NCBI GenBank assembly: GCA_000388065.2 | Contig: KB932233.1 | Reading direction: 5' to 3' (one strand) | DNA: 17,637 nucleotides | Source: Fonticula alba ATCC 38817 | Taxonomy: Eukaryota > Protista > Nucleariida | In this document: positions 6,001-7,093 of the stretch, one piece after another | Position numbering within the stretch: the first letter of the stretch is position 1 | Layout of the letters: each line of letters starts with the position of its first letter | The notes under the pieces: model-generated | Seen by the model: the letters and a program-made list of their open reading frames with translations, nothing else | What the model was told of the DNA's origin: nothing | Databases searched by the model: none | Translations under genes and position numbers: made by a program

Positions 6001-7093
6001 GGCTGCCAGGGAGAGGACCCGGCGCCGGGGACCGGCGCTCGCGCGACCAGGCCATCGGCGTCGGTCTCCCCCGAGGCATCGGCCCACGGCGCCGGGACCG
6101 TCCAACAATGGTCCAGCAGGGACCGCGTCGAGACGAACCCACAATTGAAGAGAGCCGCTTGGGCATCGGCGCGCCGGGCCGGGTTCTCTGTCAGCTCGGA
6201 CCCCATGGCCCAGAGCCCACGACCGGGCGGGAGAAAGCGCATGTGGAACATGGCGTCATACATTTCCGTGGCCTCGGCCAGGGCCTGGGGTCGCGGAGCC
6301 GCGACAGGGAGCCAAAAGCGCCGGCATGAACAGAGAGACAGGGGGGGGGGGGACAAAGAAAAAAAGAGGACGAAGGAGGACCGAGAGGTTAGCATGCGGA
6401 ACAGGGGCCAGCGGGCGCCATGGCTTGGGAGGGACACTCCCGGGGGGGGGGGGGGGGAAGGAAGCCCGACGCCCGACGCACCTGGGACTCATCCCAGCCA
6501 ATGTGATGCGCACGGCACCAGCGCTCCTGCATGCGGAAGGTGCCGGTCACCACGCGAGCAACGGTCTCCCACCATTGCTCATACTGACCGACACCGGCGT
6601 CGGGATTGTCCCCGCCCTCGACCTCGCCGTACAGGCAGACCGCCAGCGAGTCGGGCGTCTTCACCCGGGAGTAGGTCCGATGGAAAACCACATGCCCGAG
6701 CCCATTGAAGCCAAAGGGCACCGGCCGGCCGGCATATGTCCGGAGAAAGTCCACCGGCAGGCGGAAGGATGCCAAGCCGTCGAAGTACGACGGCTCGCGT
6801 AGGGACCCGGCAGGCGGCGGGACCGCGGCCGTGGCGGCGCCGGCACAGGCGGTGGTGGAAAACATGGCACGCTGCCAAGAGGCACCGGGGCCCTGGTGGA
6901 GGTACAGCGCCGAAAGTGGGGCTCCGCCAATCGAACCACCCACCGGACCAGGGCCCGGAGTGCGAGCAGTCAACGTCTCGGCCGGACCCGAAGGGGAAAA
7001 CAACTGCCGGATGGCAAGATGCGGGGCACGCCGGGCGGCGCTGATGGCGGCGCTCCGCGTGGAAAGGGGGCCGGCCAGGGCGCGTCCCAACAT
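3027..7093 (-). CDS. nrdJ: Monomeric class II (adenosylcobalamin-dependent) ribonucleoside-triphosphate reductase (NrdJ/RTPR type) with an N-terminal extension. Exons 6482-7093, 4595-6284, 4305-4368, 4102-4184, 3027-3856; 3279 nt, 1092 aa.
   Basis: Motifs seen after splicing: FGFNGLGHVVFHRTYSR, EQWWETVARVV, MFHMRFLPPGRGLWAMG, ALFNCGFVS (C119-equivalent), LMDGAMLGVGIGFD, VPDSRLGWVES, GANPCLEQTLESFELCCLVE (NPCxE thiyl-radical Cys, with the resolving Cys 11 residues later), RNRRVGCSMSG, LTSIKPSGTVSLLAGATPGLHYP, HWADNQVSCTVT, LKGISFLP, YPQMPYERI, and C-terminal CETDTC (CxxxxC shuttle pair as in Lactobacillus leichmannii RTPR). All four donors are GTGCGT and the joined length is a multiple of 3. 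Confidence 0.95.
3908..4092. repeat. Imperfect (GA)n purine microsatellite in RNR intron 4. Similar tracts lie near 970-1030, 9570-9630, 10130-10260 and 15465-15500.
   Basis: Directly visible GA/GAGA/GAAA arrays. On the sense (minus) strand they are CT tracts upstream of 3' splice sites. Confidence 0.85.

What the first reader, a model, noticed from the sequence alone, without database searches (positions are those of the whole stretch)
6866..7093. B12-dependent class II ribonucleotide reductase with a mitochondrial-presequence-like N-terminus
Seen in sequence: the RNR begins MLGRALAGPLSTRSAAISAARRAPHLAIRQLFS, with 5 Arg, many Ala/Ser/Leu and no acidic residue before Glu39. About 100 residues precede the first conserved RNR block (FRL..FL..Y...VPFGFNGLG). 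Established: bacterial RTPRs lack such an extension. Adenosylcobalamin in eukaryotes is made in mitochondria (MMAB/cblB, for methylmalonyl-CoA mutase), and mitochondrial dNTPs normally come from import or salvage. Eukaryotic class II RNRs are known (for example Euglena and Dictyostelium), but I do not know of one shown to be mitochondrial. Inference: this could be an oxygen-independent, B12-powered de novo dNTP supply inside the mitochondrion, using the organelle's own AdoCbl pool.
Basis: partly seen in the sequence, partly recalled or inferred. Interest (0 to 1): 0.85.

Follow-up and report, generated by a model that had tools for sequence, protein, structure and literature searches.

The report
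B12 DNA-precursor enzyme with mitochondrial-style leader
The amoeba Fonticula alba makes a vitamin-B12-dependent enzyme for DNA building blocks that starts with a leader resembling a mitochondrial import signal; similar leaders occur on the same enzyme in many unrelated microbial eukaryotes, so it may work inside mitochondria, but nobody has tested this.

Summary
The minus-strand gene (3027-7093, five exons) encodes a 1092-aa monomeric class II ribonucleotide reductase (RTPR) of Fonticula alba (GenBank H696_06226). RNA contigs confirm all four introns. They reach 110-114 nt upstream of ATG1 (7093), which is the first AUG in that stretch.

Residues 1-33 look like a mitochondrial presequence: 5 Arg, no acidic residue before E39, an amphipathic stretch and two Tom20-type motifs. 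About 2% of chance ORFs from this GC-rich window match this. Protein-language-model neighbours of residues 1-60 are organelle-imported precursors; an off-frame control from the same DNA finds none.

The strongest evidence is comparative. Bacterial-length RTPRs have no extension. About 30 eukaryotic or eukaryote-like homologues have one, including fungi, Creolimax, Diphylleia, Filamoeba, Percolomonas and Aphanomyces. Most start basic and acid-poor, with no sequence similarity to each other.

Import itself is untested. No targeting predictor was available here, and I could not establish whether Fonticula has a class I RNR. The papers I found call eukaryotic class II RNR cytosolic or "enigmatic".

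Verdict: a known enzyme with a plausible new localisation, about 55% likely. The same scan also noted this gene's introns and its dual-start layout on this window.

The parts
7094..7207 (-). 5' UTR of the RTPR mRNA (at least 110-114 nt). It contains no ATG in any frame.
   Evidence: RNA contigs from four runs end at 7203-7207, and depth is zero from 7209 to 7700. ATG scan.
6995..7093 (-). Codons 1-33, the presequence-like core (MLGRALAGPLSTRSAAISAARRAPHLAIRQLFS). ATG1 is at 7093-7091 in the weak context CGCATGT. Tom20-like motifs are LGRAL (2-6) and IRQLF (28-32). The amphipathic stretch is roughly residues 14-32. A possible processing site lies near R29-Q30-L31-F32.
   Evidence: Codon-usage score for codons 1-38 favours frame 0 (0.49, against about 0 in the other frames and negative values in UTR and introns). 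Language-model neighbours are organelle precursors, and the off-frame control finds none.
6866..6994 (-). Codons 34-76, a Gly/Pro/Ala-rich low-complexity linker with a weak coding signal.
6863..6865 (-). In-frame ATG for Met77, in context GCCATGT (-3 G). It is the only other ATG in any frame between 7210 and 6850 and is a possible second start.
6767..6862 (-). Codons 78-109, the rest of the extension before the first conserved block. GC3 here is coding-like (0.84 over codons 77-125).
6482..7093 (-). Exon 1 (204 codons), containing the start of the RNR_Alpha domain. FRLPVDF is at 6766-6746 and PFGFNGLG at 6718-6695.
6285..6481 (-). Intron 1, with a GTGCGT donor.
   Evidence: spliced joint in RNA contigs of all four runs.
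4595..6284 (-). Exon 2, the catalytic core. It holds the C119 equivalent in LFNCGF (6152-6135), the insertion domain, the thiyl-radical Cys in NPCLEQ (4880-4863) and the C419 equivalent in ELCCLVE (4847-4827).
4369..4594 (-). Intron 2, with a GTGCGT donor.
4305..4368 (-). Exon 3.
4185..4304 (-). Intron 3, with a GTGCGT donor.
4102..4184 (-). Exon 4.
3857..4101 (-). Intron 4, with a GTGCGT donor and a CT-rich repeat.
3027..3856 (-). Exon 5, with the C-terminal redox tail CETDTC (3059-3042) and the TAA stop codon.

Best explanation
The gene encodes an intact monomeric adenosylcobalamin-dependent ribonucleoside-triphosphate reductase of the Lactobacillus leichmannii type. Translation from the first AUG of the mRNA adds about 109 residues to the N-terminus. 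The first 30 or so act as a matrix-targeting presequence: positively charged, free of acidic residues, amphipathic, with Tom20-type motifs. The rest is a disordered linker. This isoform would be imported into the mitochondrial matrix and the presequence removed near R29-F32. In the matrix it would reduce NTPs directly to dNTPs for mitochondrial DNA, without oxygen or a diiron-tyrosyl subunit. It would use AdoCbl from the mitochondrial adenosyltransferase and electrons from a thioredoxin-type system via its C-terminal CxxxxC tail. Shown here: enzyme identity, intact catalytic residues, gene structure, a transcript that contains AUG1 as its first AUG, the presequence-like physicochemistry, and its recurrence in homologues. 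Inferred: initiation at AUG1, import, processing, the cofactor and reductant sources, and the role in mtDNA supply.
For: Enzyme identity: Pfam RNR_Alpha and RNR-II_ins_dom; PDB 1L1L at 8.6e-36, with the C119, C408 and C419 equivalents, the Asn and Glu of the NPC.E motif aligned; C-terminal CETDTC. Transcript: contigs from four runs splice all four introns and extend to 7203-7207, and no ATG lies upstream of ATG1 within that stretch. Coding signal: frame 0 is preferred over codons 1-38. Presequence features: 5 Arg, no acidic residue before E39, hydrophobic moment 0.67 and two phi-x-x-phi-phi motifs; the charge and amphipathicity features together occur in 2% of 97 composition-matched ORFs, and two or more motifs also in 2%. 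Language-model feature search: residues 1-60 are nearest to small imported precursors (IATP, COX5B, ATP synthase subunits, RbcS, CP12). The TRM1 neighbour's N-terminus behaves similarly, and an off-frame peptide from the same DNA hits no named family. Comparative: 22 of 29 homologues in which the PFGF block starts at residue 55 or later (the window's protein among them) have net charge of +3 or more and at most 1 acidic residue in their first 30 residues. Among the 20 with extensions of at least 50 aa, the first 25 residues are more basic than the rest of the extension (0.13 against 0.01 net charge per residue, Wilcoxon p=3e-4). These lie scattered across the eukaryote-containing part of the tree and include transcriptome-derived sequences from Diphylleia, Percolomonas and Filamoeba, and proteins from AT-rich organisms. 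[quoted passage not shown]
Against: No dedicated targeting predictor or experiment was available. The genome is about 70% GC, so Arg/Ala-rich, acid-poor N-termini arise by chance in about 9% of ORFs. Codons 39-76 have flat GC3 and a weak frame preference. AUG1 has a weak context (-3 C, +4 U), while Met77 has -3 G. The putative MPP site does not fit the canonical R-2, R-3 or R-10 motifs cleanly. Several eukaryotic homologues have no extension or a non-basic one: most oomycetes, Umbelopsis, Catenaria, Calcarisporiella and Parvularia. A preprint states that algal RNR II is cytosolic with no consistent targeting prediction, so AdoCbl enzymes need not be mitochondrial. If Fonticula lacks a class I RNR, an exclusively mitochondrial enzyme would be implausible; this was not checked.
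Confidence: 0.55

Rival explanations
1. The enzyme is purely cytosolic. The N-terminal 109 residues would be a non-targeting disordered tail of the kind this GC-rich genome adds throughout the protein, or mostly 5' leader with translation starting mainly at Met77. The presequence-like look would then be a composition artefact.
For: About 9% of chance ORFs in the window share the charge pattern. The Fonticula protein is inflated with low-complexity inserts elsewhere: 1092 aa against about 660-780 in relatives, with a long tree branch. Codons 39-76 lack a GC3 signal. AUG1 has a weak context and Met77 has -3 G. The papers found treat eukaryotic RNR II as cytosolic.
Against: AUG1 is the first AUG of the assembled transcript. 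Codons 1-38 prefer frame 0. The combined features are rare in the null set, at 2%. The off-frame control peptide does not resemble transit peptides in the feature search, while the real N-terminus does. The same kind of N-terminus recurs in homologues from AT-rich and GC-neutral organisms and in transcriptomes.
Confidence: 0.33
2. Dual localisation from one mRNA, a sub-variant of the main explanation. Ribosomes that initiate at the weak AUG1 make the mitochondrial precursor. Ribosomes that scan past it initiate at Met77 and make a cytosolic enzyme for nuclear DNA synthesis. This is the arrangement known for yeast TRM1.
For: No ATG occurs in any frame between AUG1 and Met77 over 228 nt. AUG1 sits in CGCAUGU and Met77 in GCCAUGU. 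The adjacent TRM1 gene has the same layout: weak AUG1, no ATG for 77 codons, then GCCAUGG at codon 78. From general knowledge, TRM1 is a classic two-start mitochondrial and nuclear protein in yeast.
Against: By my rough estimate (not a tool result), a 228-nt ATG-free stretch is expected by chance in about 1 case in 6 at this base composition. The Kozak preference of Fonticula is unknown. Allomyces and Blastocladiella homologues have no internal Met before the catalytic domain, so a second start is not a general feature. No isoform data exist.
Confidence: 0.25
3. The extension targets another compartment (ER or secretory pathway, or peroxisome via PTS2), or it is a regulatory domain such as an ATP-cone.
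For: None specific. It is considered only because N-terminal extensions can have these roles.
Against: By inspection of residues 1-33, there is no uninterrupted hydrophobic core of 7-8 residues or more, and no R-[LVIQ]-x5-[HQ]-[LA] PTS2 pattern. Pfam and NCBIfam find nothing in residues 1-125. From general knowledge, Fonticula has no plastid.
Confidence: 0.04

Closest known systems
Lactobacillus leichmannii ribonucleoside-triphosphate reductase (RTPR, PDB 1L1L), monomeric class II RNR
   Same: Same family. The C119, C408 and C419 equivalents, the NPC.E finger loop, the dimer-mimicking insertion domain and the C-terminal CxxxxC tail are all present.
   Different: The Fonticula protein has a 109-residue N-terminal extension and several internal low-complexity inserts. 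Its gene has four spliceosomal introns. It scores below the NCBIfam equivalog cut-off (281 against 340 bits).
Eukaryotic monomeric class II RNRs: Dictyostelium discoideum NrdJ (PMC3605638), Euglena and Phytophthora (PMC3019208), early-diverging fungi (PMC8085122)
   Same: Same enzyme clade. Fonticula RNR II is already included in the published fungal B12 phylogeny. Dictyostelium has it alongside a class I RNR, and the authors call its role 'enigmatic'.
   Different: None of the papers I found discusses an N-terminal presequence or a mitochondrial location. One preprint states the algal enzyme is cytosolic.
Mitochondrial AdoCbl system of animals (MMAB adenosyltransferase, MMAA, methylmalonyl-CoA mutase)
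   Same: It would share the compartment and the cofactor. Fonticula is reported to have MeaB/MMAA, CblD, the mutase and the epimerase. An unchecked earlier scan note reports an adenosyltransferase gene.
   Different: From general knowledge, the mutase is the only AdoCbl enzyme known in mitochondria. A reductase client would be new.
Yeast TRM1-type two-AUG mitochondrial and nuclear dual targeting
   Same: Weak first AUG, a presequence, and a second in-frame AUG in better context. The neighbouring Fonticula TRM1 gene shows the same layout.
   Different: This is unproven for either Fonticula gene, and other RTPR homologues do not share the second start.
Mitochondrial dNTP supply in yeast and mammals (carrier import, TK2/dGK salvage, cytosolic R1/p53R2)
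   Same: It would serve the same need, dNTPs for mtDNA.
   Different: From general knowledge, those systems have no accepted matrix RNR. Here de novo reduction would take place inside the organelle.

Membership tests
Monomeric class II RNR (RTPR, EC 1.17.4.2) | Thiyl-radical cysteine on the finger loop (C408 in the N-P-C-x-E motif) | tested here: met
   ANPCLEQ aligns to TNPCGEI of 1L1L. It covers residues 673-678, window 4880-4863.
Monomeric class II RNR (RTPR, EC 1.17.4.2) | Redox-active cysteine pair (C119 and C419) | tested here: met
   LFNCGF aligns to LNNCWF, and ELCCLVE aligns to EPCNLFE with the same 11-residue spacing from the thiyl Cys.
Monomeric class II RNR (RTPR, EC 1.17.4.2) | [quoted passage not shown] | tested here: met
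   Pfam PF21995 RNR-II_ins_dom at 1e-10, above the gathering score.
Monomeric class II RNR (RTPR, EC 1.17.4.2) | C-terminal CxxxxC tail that accepts electrons from thioredoxin | tested here: met
   CETDTC at residues 1083-1088. The fungal homologues have equivalent tails.
Monomeric class II RNR (RTPR, EC 1.17.4.2) | Score above the curated equivalog cut-off (NCBIfam TIGR02505) | tested here: not met
   281.5 bits against a cut-off of 340, E=1.3e-83. The test used the GenBank model, which wrongly removes 110 residues of exon 2, and the protein is divergent with inserts. The family-level match is unambiguous.
Monomeric class II RNR (RTPR, EC 1.17.4.2) | AdoCbl-dependent NTP reduction | not testable with these tools
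   This needs an enzyme assay.
Mitochondrial matrix-targeting presequence | N-terminal stretch of 15-60 residues with net positive charge and almost no acidic residues | tested here: met
   5 Arg and no Asp or Glu in residues 1-38. This occurs in 9% of composition-matched ORFs.
Mitochondrial matrix-targeting presequence | Amphipathic helix potential and a Tom20 phi-x-x-phi-phi motif | tested here: met
   The maximum hydrophobic moment is 0.67, about the 90th percentile of the null. LGRAL and IRQLF are present; two or more such motifs occur in 2% of null ORFs. These are home-made measures, not a validated predictor.
Mitochondrial matrix-targeting presequence | MPP cleavage motif (R-2, R-3 or R-10) | tested here: inconclusive
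   R29-Q30-L31-F32-S33 is only an approximate R-3 or R-2 site, and there is no R-10 match.
Mitochondrial matrix-targeting presequence | Positive call by trained predictors (TargetP2, MitoFates, DeepLoc) | not testable with these tools
   These predictors are not installed. The nearest substitute was the language-model feature search with controls, which counts only as a lead.
Mitochondrial matrix-targeting presequence | Demonstrated import and processing | not testable with these tools
   This needs a reporter fusion or organelle proteomics.

The most novel reading that the evidence does not exclude
The monomeric B12-dependent RNR is a widespread mitochondrial-matrix enzyme of eukaryotes, possibly ancestral to the eukaryotic clade. 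It would occur in Fonticula, blastoclads, chytrids, kickxellid fungi, ichthyosporeans, Diphylleia, amoebozoans, heteroloboseans and some oomycetes. It would sit next to the organelle's AdoCbl-making machinery and give mitochondria their own oxygen-independent, hydroxyurea-insensitive de novo dNTP supply. That would explain why organisms with a class I RNR also keep a class II enzyme whose role has been called 'enigmatic'.
Probability: 0.35. Interest if true: 0.85.

Novelty: new variant of a known kind. Interest (0 to 1): 0.62.

Why it matters
From general knowledge, mitochondria are thought to get dNTPs by import and salvage, and no matrix ribonucleotide reductase is accepted in any eukaryote. 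Methylmalonyl-CoA mutase is the only AdoCbl enzyme known in the organelle. A matrix RTPR would add a second client for mitochondrial B12. It would give mtDNA replication an autonomous precursor supply that works without oxygen. It would also offer a concrete, testable answer to why eukaryotes with a class I RNR retain a class II enzyme, a question left open for Dictyostelium (PMC3605638). The same N-terminal signature appears in many lineages, including culturable ones such as Allomyces, Blastocladiella and Creolimax, so the idea can be tested outside Fonticula.

Tried and rejected
1. Raw-read evidence for the transcription start: the four 2026 RNA runs offered under the same species label (X12, X13, X17, X18) laid no reads and evidently do not contain this organism. 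Only assembled contigs of the 2012 runs were usable, so start-site heterogeneity could not be measured.

2. A second homologue search seeded with P0108 was meant to recover named amoebozoan sequences such as Dictyostelium. It returned mostly bacterial-length metagenomic proteins and no Dictyostelium entry, though it added nine more extended N-termini, eight of them basic and acid-poor.

3. Class I RNR and the adenosyltransferase of Fonticula: no tool could search this genome by family, and no query sequence was available by reference. The scan's notes hold no RNR entry, and only the title of an unchecked note mentions the adenosyltransferase. This remains unresolved.

4. Signal peptide, PTS2, ATP-cone or any other domain in residues 1-125: rejected by inspection and by empty Pfam and NCBIfam results.

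5. GC3 periodicity as proof that codons 1-76 are coding: ambiguous. Codons 1-38 give 0.79, but the whole stretch is flat at 0.71. A codon-usage score gave a clearer but still modest preference for frame 0.

6. Literature searches for any report of a mitochondrial class II RNR found none. The library lacks most subscription-journal papers, for example the 2006 Euglena paper, which I know of only from memory.

Full report
**What is there**

The finding lies on the minus strand. Four GTGCGT donors define five exons: 7093-6482, 6284-4595, 4368-4305, 4184-4102 and 3856-3027. Together they give a 3279-nt CDS and a 1092-aa protein.

Logan contigs from four 2012 RNA runs splice all four introns exactly as inferred. 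No contig covers 7209-7700.

The best database hit, P0001, is Fonticula alba H696_06226. It has the same Met1, but its 982-aa model removes three exon-2 segments (44, 32 and 34 residues) that the RNA contigs retain. This confirms the organism named in earlier scan notes.

**Enzyme identity**

- Pfam finds RNR_Alpha and the class II insertion domain.
- PDB 1L1L, the L. leichmannii RTPR, matches at 8.6e-36. C119, C408 (in NPCLEQ) and C419 all align.
- The C-terminus carries a CETDTC redox tail.
- NCBIfam TIGR02505 matches at 1.3e-83 but scores 281 bits, below its 340-bit equivalog cut-off. This fits a divergent, insert-rich protein with a long tree branch (0.83).
- No domain is detected in residues 1-125.

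**Is the N-terminus translated?**

- The RNA contigs from all four runs stop at 7203-7207, giving a leader of about 110 nt that contains no ATG. ATG1 is therefore the first AUG in the assembled transcript.
- ATG1 has a weak context (CGCAUGU). The only other ATG in any frame between 7210 and 6850 is in-frame Met77, in context GCCAUGU.
- A codon-usage log-likelihood trained on the enzyme body prefers frame 0 over codons 1-38 (0.49 against about 0). The preference is weaker over codons 39-76 (0.39 against 0.20 and 0.05). The 5' UTR and the introns score negative.
- GC3 is 0.79 for codons 1-38, about 0.63 by difference for codons 39-76, and 0.84 for codons 77-125.
- Taken together, use of ATG1 is likely but not proven.

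**Is it presequence-like beyond chance?**

Residues 1-38 hold 5 Arg and no acidic residue. The maximal 11-residue hydrophobic moment is 0.67, over residues 19-31. There are two Tom20-type motifs, LGRAL (2-6) and IRQLF (28-32).

| Feature | Share of 97 Met-initiated six-frame ORFs from the window |
|---|---|
| Charge pattern alone | 9% |
| Charge pattern plus hydrophobic moment | 2% |
| Two or more Tom20-type motifs | 2% |

The MPP site is only approximate, around R29-Q-L-F-S.

A language-model feature search of residues 1-60 returned small imported precursors as its nearest named clusters: mitochondrial IATP, COX5B and ATP synthase subunits, and plastid RbcS and CP12. Scores were low, 0.5-0.64. 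An off-frame Arg-rich peptide from the same DNA hit no named family. The N-terminus of the neighbouring TRM1 gene gave the same transit-peptide-type neighbours. These results are leads, not predictions.

**Comparative evidence (the strongest line)**

Among the 120 best homologues, bacterial-length proteins (about 656-670 aa) reach the RTYSR motif by residue 28-36. About 30 eukaryotic or eukaryote-like proteins carry 20-290 extra N-terminal residues.

Named examples with basic, acid-poor starts are:
- Fungi: Blastocladiella, Allomyces, Cladochytrium, Gonapodya, Coemansia and Kickxella.
- Other eukaryotes: Creolimax, Diphylleia, Filamoeba and Percolomonas, and Aphanomyces stellatus.

The numbers are as follows.
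- 22 of the 29 sequences in which the PFGF block starts at residue 55 or later (28 homologues plus the window's own protein) have net charge of +3 or more and at most one acidic residue in their first 30 residues.
- Among the 20 with extensions of at least 50 residues, the first 25 residues are more basic than the rest of the same extension (0.13 against 0.01 net charge per residue, p=3e-4). They are also less acidic (0.036 against 0.10, p=7e-4).

The N-termini share no sequence similarity. They come from AT-rich as well as GC-rich organisms, and several come from transcriptomes. On a FastTree they are scattered through the eukaryote-containing part of the tree. Most oomycetes and Umbelopsis lack an extension. 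Catenaria, Calcarisporiella and Parvularia have non-basic ones. The rows are not phylogenetically independent, so the p-values are descriptive only.

**Literature**

- Fonticula's RNR II is already in the fungal B12 phylogeny, together with its MeaB, CblD, MetH and MM-CoA mutase. The supplement also lists its epimerase (PMC8085122). That paper does not discuss where RNR II is located.
- Crona et al. call the role of Dictyostelium class II RNR "enigmatic" and do not consider a mitochondrial location (PMC3605638).
- A 2023 preprint states that algal RNR II is cytosolic and finds no consistent targeting signal (10.1101/2023.06.07.544158).
- Seven searches found no report of a mitochondrial class II RNR. 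The library is incomplete.

**Interpretation**

The most likely reading, at about 55%, is that the AUG1 product is imported into the matrix. A single-chain NTP reductase suits an organelle: it needs no radical-generating subunit and no nucleoside-diphosphate kinase step. From general knowledge of the mammalian pathway, AdoCbl is made in mitochondria.

The main rival, at about 33%, is a cytosolic enzyme whose tail is a by-product of GC-rich composition, or which is translated from Met77.

A dual-start variant is attractive. The adjacent TRM1 gene (7957-11180) has the same layout: a weak AUG1, 77 ATG-free codons, then GCCAUGG. From general knowledge, TRM1 is a classic two-start mitochondrial and nuclear protein in yeast. 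However, fungal RTPR homologues lack a second Met before the domain.

**Unresolved**

I could not establish whether Fonticula has a class I RNR, whether its adenosyltransferase is mitochondrial, where translation actually initiates, or whether the protein is imported.

**Verdict**

The enzyme is known, including in this species. The putative localisation, and above all its recurrence across eukaryotes, was not described in the papers I could search, and it is readily testable.

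Noticed in passing
window 7957-11180 (-): The upstream neighbour is a multi-exon TRM1 gene (tRNA N2,N2-dimethylguanosine methyltransferase, Pfam TRM). Its N-terminus is also presequence-like (MFLRVALLRVARSSSS...). It has a weak AUG1 (CACATGT), no ATG in any frame for 77 codons, and then a strong in-frame AUG at codon 78 (GCCATGG). 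This is the same layout as the RTPR gene and resembles the two-start arrangement known for yeast TRM1.
   Followed up: partly
window 4595-6284 (-), compared with P0001: The GenBank model H696_06226 (982 aa) splices out three in-frame segments of exon 2 (44, 32 and 34 residues) that the RNA contigs retain. The annotated protein is therefore 110 residues too short.
   Followed up: yes
window 12513-15604 (-): A Miro/Gem1-like gene (mitochondrial Rho GTPase) with Ras, EF-hand and EF_assoc_1/2 domains and a hydrophobic C-terminal tail lies further upstream.
   Followed up: partly
window 7275-7410, 2930-2975 and about 16500-17000: There are very long homopolymer C/G tracts, including about 60 nt between the RTPR and TRM1 genes and one just beyond the RTPR stop codon. 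An assembly gap (a run of N) near 16580-16870 is flanked by poly-C. The introns contain long CT-rich repeats.
   Followed up: no
window 6481, 4594, 4304, 4101 (-): All four introns of this gene start with GTGCGT. This matches the GT-[A/G]-C-G-T donor type that another scan note links to an altered U1 snRNA in this genome.
   Followed up: partly
P0015, P0088, P0112 (homologues): Several metagenomic RTPR homologues appear to carry inteins, judged from large insertions and, in one, a LAGLIDADG domain. In P0015 and P0112 the insertion follows the PFGFNGLG block; in P0088 it lies near the NNC motif.
   Followed up: no
P0153 and P0174 (Aphanomyces homologues): The A. stellatus RTPR model has a 50-residue basic N-terminus upstream of the acidic segment where the A. 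euteiches model starts. At least some oomycete RTPRs may therefore also have a presequence that gene models truncate.
   Followed up: no
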